Below are positions 4,543 to 8,336 of a stretch of 64,000 bases of DNA, piece after piece. The position numbers were made by a program, and so were the translations under genes. The stretch is from positions 1 to 64,000 of the IMG/VR virus record IMGVR_UViG_3300034072_000926; one strand, 5' to 3'. The notes below the pieces were generated by a model that did no database searches, was not told where the DNA came from, and saw only the letters and a program-made list of their open reading frames with translations. The first letter of the stretch is position 1; every line of letters starts with the position of its first letter.

Positions 4543-4660
4543 GATGAGCAAGTGTTGTAAAGGACTTTAAGCCAGCAAAGCTGACCTTGATGGGTTTGAA
4601 CCATCTAGTTTTGTGTATGAGACAAAAGTTTTACCGATAACCCTTTACTGTCGGCTCATC
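4543..4660 (-). ncRNA. Y RNA-like (YrlA-type, tRNA-like domain) copy 1
   Basis: GAUGAG-C-CGA...UUG-CUCAUC bulged stem; CCGA-N7-GGGUUAUC; T-arm GAUGG-UUCAAAC-CCAUC; closed acceptor-like hairpin. Confidence 0.75.
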
Positions 4661-4663
4661 TTG

Positions 4664-4737
4664 CTCCCAATGTAGGATTCGAACCTACAGCGACCTGGTT
4701 AACAGCCAAGCGCCCCTACCGATAGGGCCCATTGGGA
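4664..4737 (-). tRNA. tRNA-Asn(GTT), no CCA
   Basis: CTTGG-CTGTTAA-CCAGG, G73. Confidence 0.9.
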
Positions 4738-4760
4738 ATGTGTGATAACTGAGTTATCAA

Positions 4761-4828
4761 AAGGGCAAGTAATTGTCCCAGGGGTGTTTCAGTTTGCATA
4801 AATGATAACCCTGAGTCTTTCGGCCCTT
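4761..4828 (-). ncRNA. minimal Y RNA-like copy 2
   Basis: AAGGG-C-CGA...CUUG-CCCUU; CCGA-N8-GGGUUAUC; CUCAGGG/CCCUGGG stem. Confidence 0.7.
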
Positions 4829-4830
4829 AG

Positions 4831-4900
4831 TGCTCTAGGTAGGACTCGAACCTACGCGCTCTCGGCTCGCAACCGAAAGTCCCATCCAGTGGGCTAGAGC
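4831..4900 (-). tRNA. degenerate tRNA-Arg(GCG)-like
   Basis: Acceptor and T-arm intact, loop TTGCGAG, positions 8-9 apparently missing. Confidence 0.55.
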
Positions 4901-4901
4901 A

Positions 4902-4976
4902 TGGTAGTCACGGGGAATTCTGCCATCCCGACCTGAGTCTTGTAAGGACCCTGCTCTACTTCTGAGCTACGCGACC
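4902..4976 (-). tRNA. tRNA-Val(TAC), atypical T-loop
   Basis: GGGTC-CTTACAA-GACTC, CCA. Confidence 0.85.
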
Positions 4977-4977
4977 A

Positions 4978-5060
4978 TGGTGGGAAGTTGCAGAGTCGAA
5001 CTGCGCGCTTTCGCCGCCGGGTTACAGCCGGCTTACCCCGTCCCGGGGCTGAAACTTCCC
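4978..5060 (-). tRNA. tRNA-Tyr(GTA)
   Basis: GCCGG-CTGTAAC-CCGGC, long variable arm, CCA. Confidence 0.88.
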
Positions 5061-5103
5061 ATGTTCTCTTTATAGAGGAATAGGTGACCTGCGTCATTAT
5101 TCG

Positions 5104-5175
5104 TGATCCATAGGGGAATCGAACCCCTGTTCCCGCCTTGAGAGGGCGTGCTCTTAACCACTAGAGGAATGGACC
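5104..5175 (-). tRNA. tRNA-Glu(CTC), no CCA
   Basis: Loop CTCTCAA, Glu-type D arm. Confidence 0.9.
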
Positions 5176-5177
5176 AT

Positions 5178-5252
5178 TGGTGGATTGGGGCGATACCTAG
5201 TCGCTTGCCGCTGCCTTGAGTTACAAAGCATCTGCTATAGATTGCACAACCC
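5178..5252 (-). tRNA. pseudo-tRNA / tRNA-like, anticodon undetermined
   Basis: Acceptor-like stem with ACCA end; non-canonical anticodon and T loops. Confidence 0.4.
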
Positions 5253-5259
5253 ACATAGT

Positions 5260-5337
5260 TGGTGGACGATACAGGGCTCGAACCTGTGAAACCTCTTCCA
5301 TGTCAAGGAAGCGCTCTACCAACTGAGCTAATCGTCC
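5260..5337 (-). tRNA. tRNA-Val(GAC)
   Basis: CTTCC-TTGACAT-GGAAG, CCA. Confidence 0.92.
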
Positions 5338-5339
5338 GT

Positions 5340-5427
5340 TGCGGCAGTGGTGCTCGAACCCACCAGTCGCCCTCATTTGGGCATACAGGCTTATGAGGCC
5401 TGCGACTAACCATCTTGTCCTTACCGC
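5340..5427 (-). tRNA. tRNA-CAT (Met or Ile2) with long variable arm, no CCA
   Basis: CAGGC-CTCATAA-GCCTG; extra arm GCCC-AAATGA-GGGC. Confidence 0.8.
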
Positions 5428-5430
5428 GAG

Positions 5431-5503
5431 TGCAACAGGTGGGAATCGAACCCACTTCCTCCGATTTTCAGCCGGGTGCAATGACCACATTTGCTACCGT
5501 TGC
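5431..5503 (-). tRNA. tRNA-Phe(GAA), no CCA
   Basis: Loop CTGAAAA. Confidence 0.88.
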
Positions 5504-5504
5504 A

Positions 5505-5664
5505 TGGTCTGGCCGCTACCCAGTAGTCTATACTTGTCCCTTACGGACTGGCCTAGACTGGCGCTGCGCGGTCCCGAAGAGTTTTGACGCTCTATTCGAT
5601 ATTTTGAGAGCCCAGGGAGTAAATGGGCTCTGGGATCTTGGAAGCTTCCAAGCTTCCAAGACCT
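5505..5664 (-). ncRNA. structured ACCA-ended RNA of unknown class
   Basis: Starts right after upstream tRNA CCA; closing helix GGTCT(T)GG/CCAGACC-A; multiple hairpins (TCTTGGAAGC/GCTTCCAAGA, GAGCCCA/TGGGCTC). Confidence 0.5.
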
Positions 5665-5740
5665 TGGTGCGAAGTCAGGGAATCGAACCCTGTTAGCCGG
5701 CTTATGAGACCAGTGCGATGACCATCACCGCCCACCTCGC
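5665..5740 (-). tRNA. tRNA-CAT (Met or Ile2)
   Basis: CTGGT-CTCATAA-GCCGG, A73, CCA. Confidence 0.88.
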
Positions 5741-5752
5741 ATGAGGTATTTG

Positions 5753-5823
5753 CATCCCCTGTAGGAGTCGAACCCACGCTCTTGGACTTGGAAACCAATG
5801 TGCTACCGTAACACTTAGGAGAT
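5753..5823 (-). tRNA. tRNA-Trp(CCA), no CCA end
   Basis: A1-U72, G73, loop TTCCAAG. Confidence 0.8.
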
Positions 5824-5839
5824 ATATTGTCAATATTCG

Positions 5840-5911
5840 CAGGCCCCAGAGGATTCGAACCTCTACCAACGGCTTTGGATCACCGTCATGCCCCCTGTAC
5901 ATCAGAGGCCT
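5840..5911 (-). tRNA. Trp-like tRNA with 8-nt anticodon loop
   Basis: ACGGT-GATCCAAA-GCCGT; acceptor AGGCCTC/GGGGCCT, G73. Confidence 0.6.
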
Positions 5912-5918
5912 ATGTTTG

Positions 5919-6958: not shown

Positions 6959-6964
6959 ATTGGG

Positions 6965-7035
6965 TGCTCTCAGGAGGAATCGAACCTCCTATTCGGTCGT
7001 ACCAAGACCGCGTTATCCCACTTAACTATGAGAGC
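6965..7035 (-). tRNA. tRNA-Thr(GGT), incomplete CCA
   Basis: CGGTC-TTGGTAC-GACCG. Confidence 0.9.
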
Positions 7036-7040
7036 ATGAG

Positions 7041-7125
7041 AGGAAAGCTAGGGACTCGAACCCTAAGCCCTTTCGGGCTCGCACTCCTTAGCAGGGAGGC
7101 CTATTACCTTAATAGTCAACTTTCC
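7041..7125 (-). tRNA. tRNA-Ser(GCT), no CCA
   Basis: Loop CTGCTAA, long variable arm. Confidence 0.9.
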
Positions 7126-7129
7126 ATGT

Positions 7130-7205
7130 TGGCGCCTGTGACGGGGATCGAACCCGCCTATGGCTGATCGACAATCAGCTGCCTTCTCCAGATGGCTACA
7201 CAGAC
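7130..7205 (-). tRNA. tRNA-Asp(GTC)
   Basis: GCTGA-TTGTCGA-TCAGC, G73, CCA. Confidence 0.88.
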
Positions 7206-7210
7206 ATATT

Positions 7211-7282
7211 TGGTGGAGCATAGGGGAATCGAACCCCTCCTACCGCATTGCAAGTGCAGCGTCAAGACCCACAGGATGCCCC
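7211..7282 (-). tRNA. tRNA-Ala(TGC)
   Basis: GGGGCAT/ATGCTCC with G3:U70, loop CTTGCAA, CCA. Confidence 0.88.
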
Positions 7283-7294
7283 ATGTGGAATGTT

Positions 7295-7371
7295 TGGTGG
7301 ACAGTCTGGGGTTCGAACCCAGGACCTACGGTTTAAGAGACCGCCGCTGCTACCGACTGAGCTAACTGTCC
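7295..7371 (-). tRNA. tRNA-Lys(CTT)
   Basis: GCGGT-CTCTTAA-ACCGT, CCA. Confidence 0.92.
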
Positions 7372-7388
7372 ATATTTCAACAATTTGT

Positions 7389-7463
7389 TGGATGCCCCTC
7401 TAGGGTTCGAACCTAGGTTGACGCGCTCAGAACGCGCTCTCTTACCAGTTAGAGGAAGGGGCA
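7389..7463 (-). tRNA. tRNA-Gln(CTG)
   Basis: U1-A72, loop TTCTGAG, CCA. Confidence 0.9.
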
Positions 7464-7464
7464 A

Positions 7465-7562
7465 TGGTCCCAGGGACACACCACTTGATCAGTTAATTAC
7501 TCTGATCGCAAAGGCTTAGCCATAGGTTCCGGCTGATGTTTTCAGTCTACAGCGGTCCCTGG
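7465..7562 (-). ncRNA. structured ACCA-ended RNA of unknown class
   Basis: Closing stem CCAGGGAC/GTCCCTGG followed by GACCA; three internal hairpins; no T-loop. Confidence 0.5.
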
Positions 7563-7571
7563 AAAATCAAC

Positions 7572-7638
7572 GCCTGAGCAAGTTTATGCGGCGAGGGGGA
7601 GTATCTTAAAAGGATAACCCTCATGCTTCGGCTCAAGC
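7572..7638 (-). ncRNA. minimal Y RNA-like copy 4
   Basis: GCUUGAG-C-CGA-N7-GGGUUAUC...CUUG-CUCAGGC. Confidence 0.72.
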
Positions 7639-7643
7639 TTTAG

Positions 7644-7714
7644 ATCCCCAAAATGGATTCGAACCACTACAGGCAGAGTCAGAGTCTGCAGTCCTACCGT
7701 TAGACGATTGGGGA
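7644..7714 (-). tRNA. tRNA-Gln(CTG), no CCA
   Basis: GCAGA-CTCTGAC-TCTGC. Confidence 0.9.
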
Positions 7715-7718
7715 ATGA

Positions 7719-7881
7719 TGGAGTGTCATAGGTCTCTACCGCGAGATTAAGTTGGGATCGACTTCCAACTCTACAACCGTCCGGCCTCGCCATGTCCAGC
7801 TCTGATCCACTTTCGTGAGACCCGCCGGCCAGCTGATACCAAGGTATCCAGGGATTCGACCCCTCGGACGTTTTAACTCCA
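7719..7881 (-). ncRNA. ~165-nt structured RNA of unknown class
   Basis: Closing stem TGGAGT/ACTCCA; GNRA-capped CAC-GAAA-GTG; two T-loop-like hairpins; first element after TTGACA-17-TACATG promoter. Confidence 0.5.
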
Positions 7882-7921
7882 AATAAGCATGTAACAGAGA
7901 GTAAACTCAATGTCAATAGCT

Positions 7922-7996
7922 TGGTGACCCATAGGGGAATTGAACCCCTGTTCTCGCCTTGAAAGGGCGCGCTCTTAACCACTAGAGGAATGGGCC
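7922..7996 (-). tRNA. tRNA-Glu(TTC)
   Basis: Loop CTTTCAA, CCA. Confidence 0.92.
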
Positions 7997-8024
7997 ATAT
8001 AGTTTATCGACATCTCGGTCAATC

Positions 8025-8111
8025 TGGAGGACTAGGTGGGGTTCGAACCCACAAGGGATATTATCCGTCGCATTAAGAGTGCGGTGAGCCAACCAATTGC
8101 TCAACTAGTCC
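8025..8111 (-). tRNA. tRNA-Lys(CTT) anticodon with long variable arm, U73
   Basis: CCGCA-CTCTTAA-TGCGA; extra arm GGAT-AAT-ATCC; CCA. Confidence 0.82.
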
Positions 8112-8125
8112 ATAGAGTTATTCAG

Positions 8126-8196
8126 AGCGGACAAAGGGATTCGAACCCTCACTAACAGCTTGGAAGGCTGGTTTGCTACCATTACAATATATCCGC
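8126..8196 (-). tRNA. tRNA-Gly(TCC), no CCA
   Basis: Loop CTTCCAA. Confidence 0.88.
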
Positions 8197-8197
8197 A

Positions 8198-8336
8198 TGG
8201 TCAACGGGCAAGTGGTGCAAAGGATGTTTTCCCGGCTTTACCAATTTGCCTACCACCCGTCAGTTGGTCGGGTGGGGAGGACTTGAACCTCCAAACAGGG
8301 CTTCCTAATAGCGATAACCCTTAACTATCGGCCCGT
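8198..8336 (-). ncRNA. Y RNA-like (YrlA-type) copy 5 with circularly permuted tRNA halves
   Basis: AACGGG-C-CGA-N7-GGGUUAUC; T-arm GGAGG-UUCAAGU-CCUCC; CCACCCG-ACCA-linker-CGGGUGG; D-arm GGC-AAAUUGGUAAA-GCC; CUUG-CCCGUU. Confidence 0.82.

What the first reader, a model, noticed from the sequence alone, without database searches (positions are those of the whole stretch)
4543..8336. Five Y RNA-like genes sharing a CCGA-N7/8-GGGUUAUC motif interleaved with tRNAs
Seen: 4543-4660, 4761-4828, 6454-6582, 7572-7638 and 8198-8336 each have a terminal helix with a bulged C (stem-C-CGA paired to UUG-stem), followed by GGGUUAUC and ending in CUUG-stem. Outer stem sequences differ but stay paired. Three carry a T-arm and closed acceptor-like hairpin; two are ~68-nt minimal forms. 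Established: the bulged-C helix is the Ro60/Rsr binding site, and bacterial YrlA RNAs mimic tRNA. From memory, CCGA-N7-GGGUUAUC also matches vertebrate Y4 RNA. Inference: a Ro/Y ribonucleoprotein system with five adaptor RNAs, or decoys for host Rsr or anticodon nucleases. No Ro60 gene is in this window.
Basis: partly seen in the sequence, partly recalled or inferred. Interest (0 to 1): 0.82.

Follow-up and report, generated by a model that had tools for sequence, protein, structure and literature searches.

The report
Phage Y RNA genes among tRNAs
A 465-kb jumbo phage encodes its own Ro60 protein and at least eleven Y RNA genes, ten packed between its tRNA genes and carrying the Ro60-binding sequence signature of animal Y RNAs; this extends a known phage and bacterial RNA system and is not a new kind of system.

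Summary
All five elements lie on the minus strand at the stated coordinates. CCGA-N7/8-GGGTTATC occurs 5 times in the window, with 0 expected by chance.

The window is part of a 465,259-bp phage genome with a full-length Ro60 gene (TROVE + vWA) at 129,219-130,991. The genome has at least 11 elements:
- five in the window;
- five at the other end of the record, in the same tRNA array;
- one about 1.2 kb upstream of Ro60.

Both helices of the Ro60-binding module, the T-arm and the acceptor-like hairpin covary strongly across 44 distinct homologues (97% paired vs 66% in shuffles). In viral contigs the element co-occurs with Ro60 (28/38 vs 10/45 controls).

Long forms are YrlA-type circularly permuted tRNA mimics. 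Short forms (62-68 nt) are bare Ro60-binding modules. Many start 0-4 nt after one tRNA and end 5-6 nt before the next, which suggests release by tRNA-processing enzymes.

Phage Y RNAs beside Ro60 are already published. What I did not find described is the large, old paralogue family dispersed in jumbo-phage tRNA arrays, and the complete animal-type module. Expression and Ro60 binding are not shown.

The parts
4543..4660 (-). Y1, long-form Y RNA (118 nt). It has the Ro60-binding module, a hairpin with the 7-nt loop CUCAUAC, a T-arm and a closed hairpin. No D-arm is evident.
   Evidence: Motif at 4636-4654. Anatomy. Model R2 scores 62.9 bits. It starts 2 nt after tRNA-Asn 4663-4737 and ends 6 nt before tRNA-Asn 4465-4536.
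4761..4828 (-). Y2, minimal Y RNA (68 nt): the Ro60-binding module closed by a short loop.
   Evidence: Motif at 4804-4823. Model R1 scores 48.2 bits. One contig of run X18 has 17 unrelated bases in place of 4741-4829.
6453..6583 (-). Y3, long-form YrlA-type Y RNA (131 nt). It has the Ro module, a hairpin with the 7-nt loop CUUGAAA, a T-arm, a 7-bp closed acceptor stem with CCA in its loop, and a D-arm-like segment.
   Evidence: Motif at 6558-6576. R2 scores 103.5 bits. ARAGORN miscalls 6510-6588 as tRNA-Ser and Rfam tRNA scores 27.6 bits on 6513-6579. It abuts tRNA-Leu 6584-6657 and ends 5 nt before tRNA-Ile 6374-6447. Syntenic orthologues exist in G028 and G001.
7572..7638 (-). Y4, minimal Y RNA (67 nt).
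   Evidence: Motif at 7613-7631. R1 scores 59.3 bits. The Rfam nematode sbRNA model RF01656 aligns end to end at 19.2 bits through CCG, GGGUUAUC and AACUUG. It starts 4 nt after tRNA-Gln 7643-7714.
8202..8338 (-). Y5, long-form YrlA-type Y RNA (137 nt). It has the Ro module, a short hairpin, a T-arm, a 7-bp closed acceptor stem followed by ACCA, and a D-arm.
   Evidence: Motif at 8313-8331. R2 scores 119.2 bits. Rfam YrlA RF02553 scores 24.2 bits through the T, acceptor and D arms. It abuts tRNA-Pro 8337-8413 and ends 5 nt before tRNA-Gly 8125-8196. RNA-library contig 8254-8414 matches with 0 differences.
447..10309 (-). The window's part of the tRNA array that hosts the Y RNA genes. The array continues across the record end to genome position ~456,888. 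It holds about 50 tRNA genes and 10 Y RNAs in all.
   Evidence: ARAGORN and Rfam tRNA calls. Joined-array table. No excess of minus-strand promoter-like or terminator-like sites inside the array.

Best explanation
These are genuine Y RNA genes, the RNA partners of the Ro60 protein that the same jumbo phage encodes.

Shown by computation:
- The 5' and 3' ends of each RNA pair into a helix whose sequence varies but whose pairing is kept.
- That helix leads into invariant CCGA on one strand and CUUG on the other, then a second covarying helix that ends in GGG, followed by UUAUC. This is the layout of the Ro60-binding stem of animal Y RNAs.

Inferred:
- The conserved module docks on the outer surface of the Ro60 ring.
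- The variable interior selects what the particle is tethered to. In the long forms (Y1, Y3, Y5, Yb, Yc, Yd, Ye) the interior is a circularly permuted tRNA-like domain of the YrlA type: T-arm, a closed acceptor stem that often keeps N-CCA, and a D-arm. In the short forms (Y2, Y4, Ya) it is only a small loop. The copy beside Ro60 (Y-Ro) has a different interior without tRNA features.
- The ten array copies are made as part of the long tRNA precursor. RNase P cutting at the next tRNA (4-8 nt downstream, U at -1) and 3' maturation of the previous tRNA (0-5 nt upstream) would set them free. Their supply would then be coupled to phage tRNA production.
- Copies with a 7-bp acceptor stem may also be nicked by RNase P, as shown for M. 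smegmatis YrlA.
- By analogy with bacterial Ro60/Y RNA/PNPase and with phage phiLo, the particles recruit a host exoribonuclease or tRNA-binding enzymes to degrade or quality-control structured RNAs (tRNA, rRNA) during infection. The phage encodes no PNPase, RNase II/R or RtcB. Different paralogues would give different specificities.
For: - Motif: 5 hits vs 0 expected in the window. 9 exact copies in the genome, all on one strand, plus 2 variants at 63 and 53 bits. One variant swaps GGG for CCG with a compensating CGG on the partner strand.
- Ro60 gene in the same genome: TROVE 150 bits, vWA_Ro60 173 bits. PDB matches: Rsr 1e-115, human RO60 2e-110, Xenopus Ro60 8e-107. K, R and H are kept at the positions aligned to Xenopus K170, R174 and H187, and the DxSxS MIDAS motif is intact.
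- One copy lies ~1.2 kb upstream of Ro60 on the same strand and is conserved there in G028 and G001, the two relatives whose Ro60 was located; a fourth homologue (L121) lies on a 15-kb fragment that also encodes TROVE.
- Family-wide structure: 55 of 141 motif hits in viral contigs have the closing UUG plus a stem, vs 3 in the shuffled control. On 44 distinct long forms, 97.2% of cells pair vs 66.3% in shuffles and 42-49% in slid controls; 21 of 25 pairs change on both sides. Helix 2 mean run is 6.2 bp vs 4.5 +/- 0.13 with swapped partners. The minimal forms covary in stem 1.
- Co-occurrence: TROVE is present in 28/38 records with a full element (11/13 of the near-complete ones) vs 10/45 records with the motif only; Fisher p = 3e-6. 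All 40 records searched with the model (38 of them TROVE-positive) have model hits. In 50-165 kb phages the hits are tandem clusters directly upstream of Ro60.
- Positive control: the YrlA locus upstream of mycobacteriophage Catera's Ro gene scores 58 bits, and Gordonia phage BearBQ scores 68 bits.
- Architecture matches published YrlA: GNCGA motif, YUAY, and V, T, AS and D arms (PMC4201824).
- Packing: Y1, Y3, Y5, Yd and Ye end 5-6 nt before a tRNA, and Y1, Y3, Y4 and Y5 start 0-4 nt after one. The same spacing holds for orthologues in G028, G001 and Phosso, and most downstream spacers end in CAU.
- 12 of the 27 long forms that could be de-permuted have a 7-bp acceptor stem followed by N-CCA. 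[quoted passage not shown]
Against: - Binding to Ro60 and expression as discrete RNAs are not shown. The RNA-library contigs that match are low-depth and could be DNA carry-over.
- Rfam YrlA scores only 24 bits (cut-off 69). Rfam Y_RNA gives no match even at E<=10. The sbRNA model scores 19 bits (cut-off 38).
- Ten of the eleven copies lie more than 120 kb from Ro60. Published YrlA genes lie within 4 kb.
- 10 of 38 records with the element have no TROVE hit. Most are fragments, three look like false positives of my filter, and one is a complete 48-kb genome, G036.
- No effector nuclease is encoded by the phage, so the downstream function rests on analogy.
- CCGA and CUUG are invariant, so covariation cannot decide between the bulged-C pairing and a simple C-G extension of stem 1.
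Confidence: 0.82

Rival explanations
1. The RNAs are tRNA-shaped decoys or sensors that act independently of the phage Ro60. They would soak up host anticodon nucleases, other tRNA-targeting defence enzymes, or the host's own Rsr.
For: - The long forms mimic tRNA closely enough for ARAGORN to call Y3 a tRNA-Ser.
- The hairpin after UUAUC often has a 7-nt loop with U at position 2 and a purine at position 6, like an anticodon loop, and the middle triplets are diverse. All 6 of the 7-nt loops found by MFE fit this, and about 22 fit by eye.
- The genes sit among tRNA genes.
- One complete 48-kb phage (G036) has an element but no TROVE gene.
Against: - The most conserved part is the Ro60-binding module, not the tRNA-like part.
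- Three of the eleven copies have no tRNA-like domain at all, and the Ro60-adjacent copy has none either.
- The element tracks phage-encoded Ro60.
- The hairpin stems are only 2-6 bp. De-permuted sequences are not consistently read by ARAGORN with that hairpin as the anticodon arm.
- The published YrlA model treats this hairpin as a variable arm.
Confidence: 0.1
2. The long forms are circularly permuted tRNA genes, or their decaying remnants. Their real product would be a functional or formerly functional tRNA, and the shared flanks would be processing signals.
For: - The order T-arm, acceptor 3' strand, N-CCA, short loop, acceptor 5' strand, D-arm is that of permuted tRNA genes.
- ARAGORN accepts 17 of 27 de-permuted sequences as tRNAs.
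- They sit in a tRNA array.
Against: - The minimal forms and the Ro60-adjacent form share the flanking module but have no tRNA parts.
- The flanks carry the specific Ro60-binding signature and co-occur with Ro60.
- The anticodon arm is missing or reduced to 2-4 bp in most copies.
- The paralogues are old (52-67% identity), and orthologues keep their structure by compensatory change. Neither fits pseudogenes.
Confidence: 0.05
3. The elements are cis-acting structures of the tRNA operon, such as processing spacers, transcript stabilisers or attenuators, with no function in trans.
For: - They are tightly packed between tRNAs with conserved 4-8 nt spacers.
- There are no obvious own promoters or terminators.
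- Other conserved structured spacers exist in the same array.
Against: - One copy lies outside any tRNA array, next to Ro60.
- In smaller phages the same family forms clusters upstream of Ro60 and away from tRNAs.
- The sequence module is that of Y RNAs.
Confidence: 0.03

Closest known systems
YrlA / YrlB Y RNAs of bacteria (S. Typhimurium, M. smegmatis; Rfam RF02553; Chen et al. 2014, PMC4201824)
   Same: - Ends pair into a stem that carries a GNCGA motif.
- A conserved YUAY (here UUAU) follows the stem.
- The interior holds a V hairpin, a T-arm, a closed acceptor-like stem and a D-arm, forming a permuted tRNA mimic.
- A shorter partner RNA without the full tRNA domain accompanies the long one.
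- The genes are linked to Ro60.
- A 7-bp acceptor stem is present, as in the M. smegmatis YrlA that RNase P cleaves.
   Different: - Rfam's model scores 24 bits against a cut-off of 69. It also misses the known Catera locus at threshold.
- Both strands of the Ro60 helix and GGGUUAUC are conserved here. The paper says only the 5' strand is recognisable in Salmonella and M. smegmatis.
- The D and T arms differ between paralogues.
- There are at least 11 copies instead of 1-4.
- Ten copies lie in a tRNA array more than 120 kb from Ro60, not within 4 kb.
Phage Y RNAs next to phage Ro60: mycobacteriophages, CcrColossus and Bacillus phage G (Chen 2014); Thermus phage phiLo Yrl1/Yrl2 (PMC12135203)
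   Same: - A phage-encoded Ro60 has Y RNA genes upstream of it.
- Catera's locus matches my model at 58 bits with the same architecture.
- phiLo Ro60 with its Yrl RNAs binds host PNPase in vitro. This phage also lacks its own PNPase.
   Different: - Those cases have one or two copies adjacent to Ro60.
- Catera has CCGA-N9-GGUUACC and CAUG in place of GGGUUAUC and CUUG.
- Here most copies are dispersed among about 50 tRNA genes, and three are bare minimal modules.
Vertebrate Y RNAs and nematode stem-bulge RNAs (Rfam RF00019, RF01656; PMC4726728, PMC4450293)
   Same: - A lower stem with a bulged C and CGA/UUG.
- An upper stem.
- UUAUC at the 5' end of the loop.
- The RF01656 consensus (GGUCCGG..UGGGUUAUC...AACUUGACC) aligns end to end with Y4.
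- The hY4-derived fragment carries CCGA-N8-GGGUUAUC.
   Different: - Scores are below threshold (19 vs 38 bits), and RF00019 gives no match.
- The last pairs of the lower stem are G(A/G)G:C(U/C)C, not GGU:ACY.
- Animal Y RNAs have no tRNA-like domain and are made by RNA polymerase III with a U-tail.
- Common descent versus convergence on the same Ro60 surface is not resolved.
D. radiodurans Yrn1/Yrn2
   Same: Both strands of the Ro60-binding helix are retained, as in metazoa (stated in PMC4201824). The RNA tethers Rsr to PNPase.
   Different: The order of the T-like and D-like arms differs. No sequence match was found here.
Other non-tRNA RNAs housed in tRNA arrays (GOLLD in Mycobacterium tRNA arrays, cited in PMC9569102)
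   Same: A structured non-coding RNA embedded in a tRNA gene array of phage or mobile origin.
   Different: A different RNA family with no link to Ro60.

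Membership tests
Y RNA (functional class: RNA partner of Ro60) | The RNA binds Ro60/Rsr in vivo or in vitro. | not testable with these tools
   Needs immunoprecipitation or a gel shift. Indirect support only: the phage Ro60 keeps K, R and H at the positions aligned to Xenopus K170, R174 and H187. The roles of those residues are recalled from memory.
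Y RNA (functional class: RNA partner of Ro60) | The 5' and 3' ends pair into a stem that carries the conserved Ro60-binding sequence (GGUCCGA-like 5' strand, UUG on the 3' strand, bulged C). | tested here: met
   CCGA and CUUG are invariant in the 9 exact-motif copies and in the 27 aligned short forms. The flanking stem covaries: 6 of 8 pairs change on both sides and 98% of cells pair. The bulged-C register itself cannot be proven by covariation.
Y RNA (functional class: RNA partner of Ro60) | A Ro60/TROVE gene is present in the same genome and linked to the RNA genes. | tested here: met
   Ro60 lies at genome 129,219-130,991 with one copy ~1.2 kb upstream. TROVE is in 28/38 records with the element vs 10/45 controls.
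Y RNA (functional class: RNA partner of Ro60) | The RNA accumulates as a discrete small RNA. | tested here: inconclusive
   Metatranscriptome contigs cover parts of Y3 and Y5 exactly or nearly so. Depth is low and DNA carry-over cannot be excluded.
YrlA (Rfam RF02553) | A tRNA-like domain in the order V, T-arm, closed acceptor-like stem, D-arm, between the two strands of the Ro60 stem. | tested here: met
   Present in Y3, Y5, Yb and Yd. Partial in Y1, Yc and Ye. Absent in Y2, Y4, Ya and Y-Ro. The T-arm and acceptor stem covary: 4 of 5 and 7 of 7 pairs change on both sides.
YrlA (Rfam RF02553) | Score at or above Rfam's gathering threshold (69 bits). | tested here: not met
   The best score is 24.2 bits, on Y5. 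The same model also gives no threshold hit on the Ro60 neighbourhood of mycobacteriophage Catera, where Chen 2014 reports phage YrlAs and my model scores 58 bits. The Rfam model is therefore narrow.
YrlA (as defined in Chen et al. 2014) | Located within 4 kb of the Ro60 orthologue. | tested here: not met
   Only Y-Ro meets this. The other ten copies lie more than 120 kb away in the tRNA array. This was a reporting filter of that study, not a biological definition.
Vertebrate Y RNA (Rfam RF00019) | Match to the covariance model. | tested here: not met
   No match, even at E<=10 on an 81-nt query.
Nematode stem-bulge RNA (Rfam RF01656) | Match to the covariance model at or above 38 bits. | tested here: not met
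   19.2 bits on Y4 and 16.8 bits on Y5. The alignment runs end to end through the model's own conserved blocks. This is resemblance, not membership.
tRNA | A standard cloverleaf with an anticodon arm, in the normal order. | tested here: not met
   Rfam tRNA scores 27.6 and 25 bits on parts of Y3 and Y1, below the 29-bit cut-off. ARAGORN's tRNA-Ser call at 6510-6588 overlaps the true tRNA-Leu and is the Y3 mimic.

The most novel reading that the evidence does not exclude
Jumbo phages of this lineage may run a tRNA-coupled Ro60 system. A family of about ten old, individually conserved Y RNA paralogues is transcribed and processed together with the phage's own roughly 50 tRNAs. Each paralogue carries a different tRNA-like domain, some with an encoded CCA end and an anticodon-like loop. 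Each would steer the phage Ro60 and a hijacked host exonuclease or tRNA enzyme to a different class of tRNA or structured RNA. The purpose could be to clear host tRNAs or rRNA, to police the phage tRNA pool, or to counter tRNA-cleaving defences.

In addition, the complete CCGA...GGGUUAUC...CUUG module is shared by phages, several bacterial phyla and animals. That would mean the animal Y RNA core is an ancient Ro60 ligand, possibly spread by horizontal transfer, and not a metazoan invention.
Probability: 0.25. Interest if true: 0.8.

Novelty: new variant of a known kind. Interest (0 to 1): 0.6.

Why it matters
Why cells keep several Y RNAs, and what the tRNA-like domain is for, are open questions in Ro60 biology. 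This is a natural system with eleven diverged paralogues: tRNA-like, minimal, and a third type beside Ro60. All share one binding module, in a virus that must rely on host nucleases.

A cultured relative, Sinorhizobium phage Phosso on S. meliloti, carries the same unannotated genes. The roles of individual Y RNAs can therefore be tested by ordinary phage genetics.

There are two further consequences:
- Gene finders miscall these RNAs as tRNAs or leave them as gaps in phage tRNA arrays, and Rfam's YrlA model misses this branch.
- The UUAUC-containing module thought typical of animal Y RNAs and nematode sbRNAs is widespread in phages and bacteria. This bears on what Ro60 actually recognises.

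Tried and rejected
- **Rfam at gathering thresholds.** Only tRNAs were reported. At permissive thresholds YrlA and the nematode sbRNA model appear below cut-off, and Y_RNA never appears.
- **Chance.** Rejected by shuffles.
- **RNA-seq.** Six RNA libraries hold 5-12% of the sampled words. Laying four of them gave mostly partial matches from other organisms' tRNAs, plus a few exact low-depth contigs. This does not prove transcription.
- **De-permuting the tRNA-like domain to ask ARAGORN which tRNA each copy mimics.** 17 of 27 were called tRNA, but the anticodon arm was often built from my artificial junction, so identities are unreliable. I dropped this.
- **MFE folding of the post-UUAUC hairpin.** Only 6 of 32 gave 7-nt loops, though many more are visible by eye. 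It is suggestive only.
- **Recent duplication as the origin of the pairs tRNA-Asn/Y1/tRNA-Asn and tRNA-Gln/Y4/tRNA-Gln.** Rejected, because the flanking tRNAs are only ~60% identical.
- **Phage-encoded effector partners.** No RtcB, RNase PH/PNPase or RNB domain was found. An Rnl2-type ligase and a CCA-adding enzyme are present.
- **Promoter and terminator scan.** No excess, so it is uninformative for a jumbo phage.
- **Literature.** The Sim et al. 2020 review and Chen 2014's supplementary tables are not held. I therefore could not check how many copies per phage were reported before.
- **Phosso's Ro60-adjacent gap.** It gave no model hit.

Full report
**What is there.**
The window is the first 64 kb of a 465,259-bp IMG/VR virus record with 49% G+C, estimated complete by CheckV. 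Positions 447-10,309 hold a dense array of tRNA genes, almost all on the minus strand. The five flagged elements are also on the minus strand.

Read on that strand, each has the following order:
- a 5' stem of 5-7 bp;
- C, then CGA;
- 1-4 nt;
- a second helix of about 7-8 bp whose last three bases are GGG;
- UUAUC;
- an interior of 13-86 nt;
- the partner strand of the second helix;
- 3-8 nt ending in AC;
- UUG;
- the 3' strand of the first stem.

The pattern CCGA-N7/8-GGGTTATC matches five times in 64 kb, all in these elements, against 0.00 expected from shuffles.

**More copies and a Ro60 gene.**
The genome does encode one, at 129,219-130,991 on the minus strand. It is 590 aa, with Pfam TROVE at 150 bits and vWA_Ro60 at 173 bits. 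It matches D. radiodurans Rsr (E 1e-115), human RO60 and Xenopus Ro60 (E 8e-107) over its full length. It keeps K, R and H at the positions aligned to Xenopus K170, R174 and H187, and it keeps the DxSxS metal site. The roles of those residues I recall from memory.

The gene sits between the tail-sheath and tail-tube genes.

The exact motif occurs nine times in the genome, always on the minus strand:
- the five window copies;
- three near the far end of the record: Ya 464,992-465,053; Yb 462,975-463,117; Yc 462,722-462,965;
- one, Y-Ro at ~132,214-132,390, about 1.2 kb upstream of Ro60 on the same strand.

Covariance models add two variants. Yd (459,003-459,137) has CCGU in place of CCGA. Ye (463,621-463,725) has CCG in place of GGG, compensated by CGG on the partner strand, which shows that the GGG belongs to helix 2.

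The far end of the record carries nine more tRNA genes and continues the window's array. Joined, the array has about 50 tRNAs and 10 Y RNAs.

**Is it a real RNA family?**
An exact-pattern scan of viral contigs returned 119 loci. Of 141 motif hits, 55 also have the closing UUG plus at least 5 bp complementary to the 5' flank, against 3 when the flank is shuffled. Lengths fall into two classes, 60-72 nt and 116-152 nt.

Alignments of 27 short and 25 long forms show invariant CCGA and GGGTTATC, near-invariant CTTG, and variable but paired stems.

On a model-based alignment of 54 long-form hits (44 distinct):
- 97.2% of cells form standard pairs, against 66.3% in column shuffles and 42-49% when partners are slid;
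- 21 of 25 pairs show changes on both sides;
- all four helices (outer stem, top of helix 2, T-arm, acceptor-like stem) contribute.

That alignment is fitted to the model. The MAFFT/RNAalifold result and an alignment-free partner-swap test for helix 2 (6.2 vs 4.5 +/- 0.13 bp) agree with it.

**Is it a Y RNA?**
TROVE genes are present in 28 of 38 records that carry a full-architecture element, and in 11 of 13 that are at least 90% complete. They are present in 10 of 45 records with only the bare motif; Fisher p = 3e-6. Some of those 10 are probably true elements with imperfect stems.

All 40 records searched with the model, 38 of them TROVE-positive, have model hits. In 50-165 kb phages these are tandem clusters of 2-5 directly upstream of Ro60, which is the published arrangement.

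The architecture of the long forms matches the published YrlA description (PMC4201824): a GNCGA motif near the 5' end, a conserved YUAY that begins a V hairpin, then a T-arm, a closed acceptor-like stem and a D-arm.

As a positive control, the region upstream of mycobacteriophage Catera's Ro gene matches my model at 58 bits, and Gordonia phage BearBQ matches at 68 bits, with the same layout.

Rfam's own YrlA model scores only 24 bits on Y5 against a cut-off of 69. It also fails at threshold on Catera, so this failure reflects a narrow model. I therefore file the elements as Y RNAs of the YrlA/YrlB kind, while recording that formal Rfam membership is not met.

**Resemblance to animal Y RNAs.**
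The literature states that UUAUC at the 5' end of the loop is a hallmark of vertebrate Y RNAs and nematode stem-bulge RNAs, and that bacterial Y RNAs are highly divergent from the vertebrate clades (PMC4726728, PMC4450293).

- The Rfam sbRNA model RF01656 aligns end to end with Y4 through its own conserved blocks (CCG, UGGGUUAUC, AACUUG), but at 19 bits against a cut-off of 38.
- The hY4-derived fragment EV-YF1 reads GGUCCGA-N8-GGGUUAUC.
- RF00019 (Y_RNA) gives no match.

The resemblance is therefore real at the level of the Ro60-binding module, but membership is not met.

The same module with its closing stem also occurs in bacterial genomes (Chloroflexota, Deinococcales, Methylomirabilota, cyanobacteria). 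In 8 of 18 such loci Ro60 lies within the fetched flank. The module is therefore not phage-specific.

**How it probably works.**
Shown: the conserved module, its covariation, the link to Ro60, the tRNA-like interiors and the packing between tRNAs.

Five long forms end exactly 5-6 nt before the next tRNA's 5' end, and four copies start 0-4 nt after the previous tRNA's 3' end. Orthologues in two related jumbo phages (G028, 462 kb; G001, 436 kb) and in phage Phosso keep this spacing. Most downstream spacers end in CAU. There is no excess of promoter-like or terminator-like sites inside the array.

Inferred:
- The Y RNAs are excised from the tRNA precursor by RNase P and the tRNA 3'-end machinery.
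- They then bind the phage Ro60 through the conserved module.
- Twelve of the 27 long forms that could be de-permuted have a 7-bp acceptor stem followed directly by N-CCA. M. smegmatis YrlA with such a stem is cut by RNase P and receives CCA in vivo, so some phage copies may be nicked in the same way.

The phage has no PNPase, RNase II/R or RtcB. It does have an Rnl2-type ligase and a CCA-adding enzyme. By analogy with bacterial RYPER and with phiLo (PMC12135203), the particle probably borrows a host exonuclease.

The paralogues are old (52-67% identical) and have orthologues that keep their structure through compensatory change. This points to distinct roles for individual copies.

**Rivals.**
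- A decoy role independent of Ro60 cannot be excluded for the tRNA-like domains. It does not explain the minimal forms or the tie to Ro60.
- Permuted tRNA genes or pseudogenes, and purely cis-acting spacers, fit poorly.

**Novelty.**
Phage Ro60 with one or two adjacent Y RNAs is published (Chen 2014, 22 phages; phiLo 2025). TROVE proteins in some jumbo phages have been noted (PMC7824862).

In the held literature I found no description of three things:
- a large Y RNA paralogue family dispersed in a jumbo-phage tRNA array;
- minimal Y RNAs of about 62-68 nt;
- the full animal-type module in phages and bacteria.

The key review and the 2014 supplementary tables could not be read, so this judgement is provisional.

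The closest isolate is Sinorhizobium phage Phosso (469 kb; Ro60 52.5% identical; same sheath-Ro60-tube synteny). It has at least five such genes lying unannotated in GenBank gaps, which makes the system experimentally accessible.

Verdict: a real and well-supported extension of a known system, best rated as a new variant of a known kind.

Noticed in passing
genome 459,003-465,053 (outside the window; L002:3744-9794) and genome ~132,214-132,390 (L003:6215-6391): Six further Y RNA genes lie outside the window. Ya is a 62-nt minimal form, Yb is 143 nt, and Yc is 244 nt with a ~100-nt insert that contains a tRNA 5'-half-like stretch. Yd has CCGU in place of CCGA. Ye has CCG/CGG in place of GGG/CCY. 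Y-Ro is a distinct subtype without T or D arms and lies beside Ro60 in G028 and G001; a fourth homologue (L121) lies on a fragment that also encodes TROVE.
   Followed up: yes
genome 131,057-132,117 (L003:5058-6118, minus strand): Two ORFs of unknown function (93 aa and 234 aa, no Pfam or PHROG hit) lie between Y-Ro and Ro60. Phosso has hypothetical genes in the same position. They could be Ro60 partners.
   Followed up: partly
window 7464-7571 (-): A 108-nt spacer between Y4 and tRNA-Gln folds into a long stem (UCCAGGGAC...GUCCCUGGGA) and ends 4 nt before the tRNA. It is 87% conserved over 100 nt in G028. This may be another small RNA released by tRNA processing.
   Followed up: partly
window 4278-4464 (-) and 5504-5664 (-): Two strongly structured non-tRNA spacers (187 nt, MFE -72; 161 nt, MFE -64, including a perfect 13-bp GGAAGCUU-type hairpin). 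Parts of them are conserved in related jumbo phages (83% over 92 nt and 83% over 134 nt in G028). Their identity is unknown.
   Followed up: partly
window 5176-5259, 5338-5429, 6145-6287, 4831-4900, 4905-4976 (-): Cloverleaf-like sequences that ARAGORN misses. Rfam calls 4905-4976 a tRNA (40.5 bits) and scores 4831-4900 just below threshold. 5338-5429 has a CUCAUAA loop and a long extra arm. 6145-6230 has an odd D region. These are probably atypical tRNAs.
   Followed up: no
window 6510-6588 (-), 2338-2421 (+), 5839-5911 (-): Doubtful ARAGORN calls. The tRNA-Ser(tga) call is the tRNA-like domain of Y3. The tRNA-Leu call on the plus strand overlaps tRNA-Asp on the minus strand. One tRNA is reported with an undetermined two-base anticodon.
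   Followed up: partly
window 6740-6797: A tandem repeat of about 20 bp (AACAGCTTGAGCTGTTCAAA, about 2.5 copies) lies between two tRNA-Leu genes.
   Followed up: no
window 4741-4829: A contig from run X18 joins 4740 to 4830 with 17 unrelated bases in place of the segment that holds Y2. This suggests presence/absence variation of a Y RNA gene among close relatives.
   Followed up: no
window 63778-64000 (gene runs to genome 64,143, minus strand); genome 154,631-155,116: The phage encodes a CCA-adding enzyme (PolyA_pol domain, 119 bits) and an Rnl2-type RNA ligase (77 bits). Both could act on tRNAs or on nicked Y RNAs.
   Followed up: partly
L264:14330-14403 (G028 tRNA array): ARAGORN reports a tRNA with a CUA anticodon, labelled Pyl, in the related 462-kb phage. 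It is a possible amber suppressor.
   Followed up: no
PV764938.1 (Sinorhizobium phage Phosso) 19154-19290, 24187-24322, 24424-24561, 420436-420500, 420664-420735: Five Y RNA genes lie in unannotated gaps of the GenBank record. Two of them are wedged between annotated tRNA genes, 2-7 nt from each neighbour.
   Followed up: yes
L203 (Chloroflexota MAG QMIT01000002.1), L149, L179, L212: Bacterial contigs carry 2-4 copies of the same CCGA-N7/8-GGGTTATC module. L203 has four copies with closing stems and a Ro60 homologue in the flank.
   Followed up: partly
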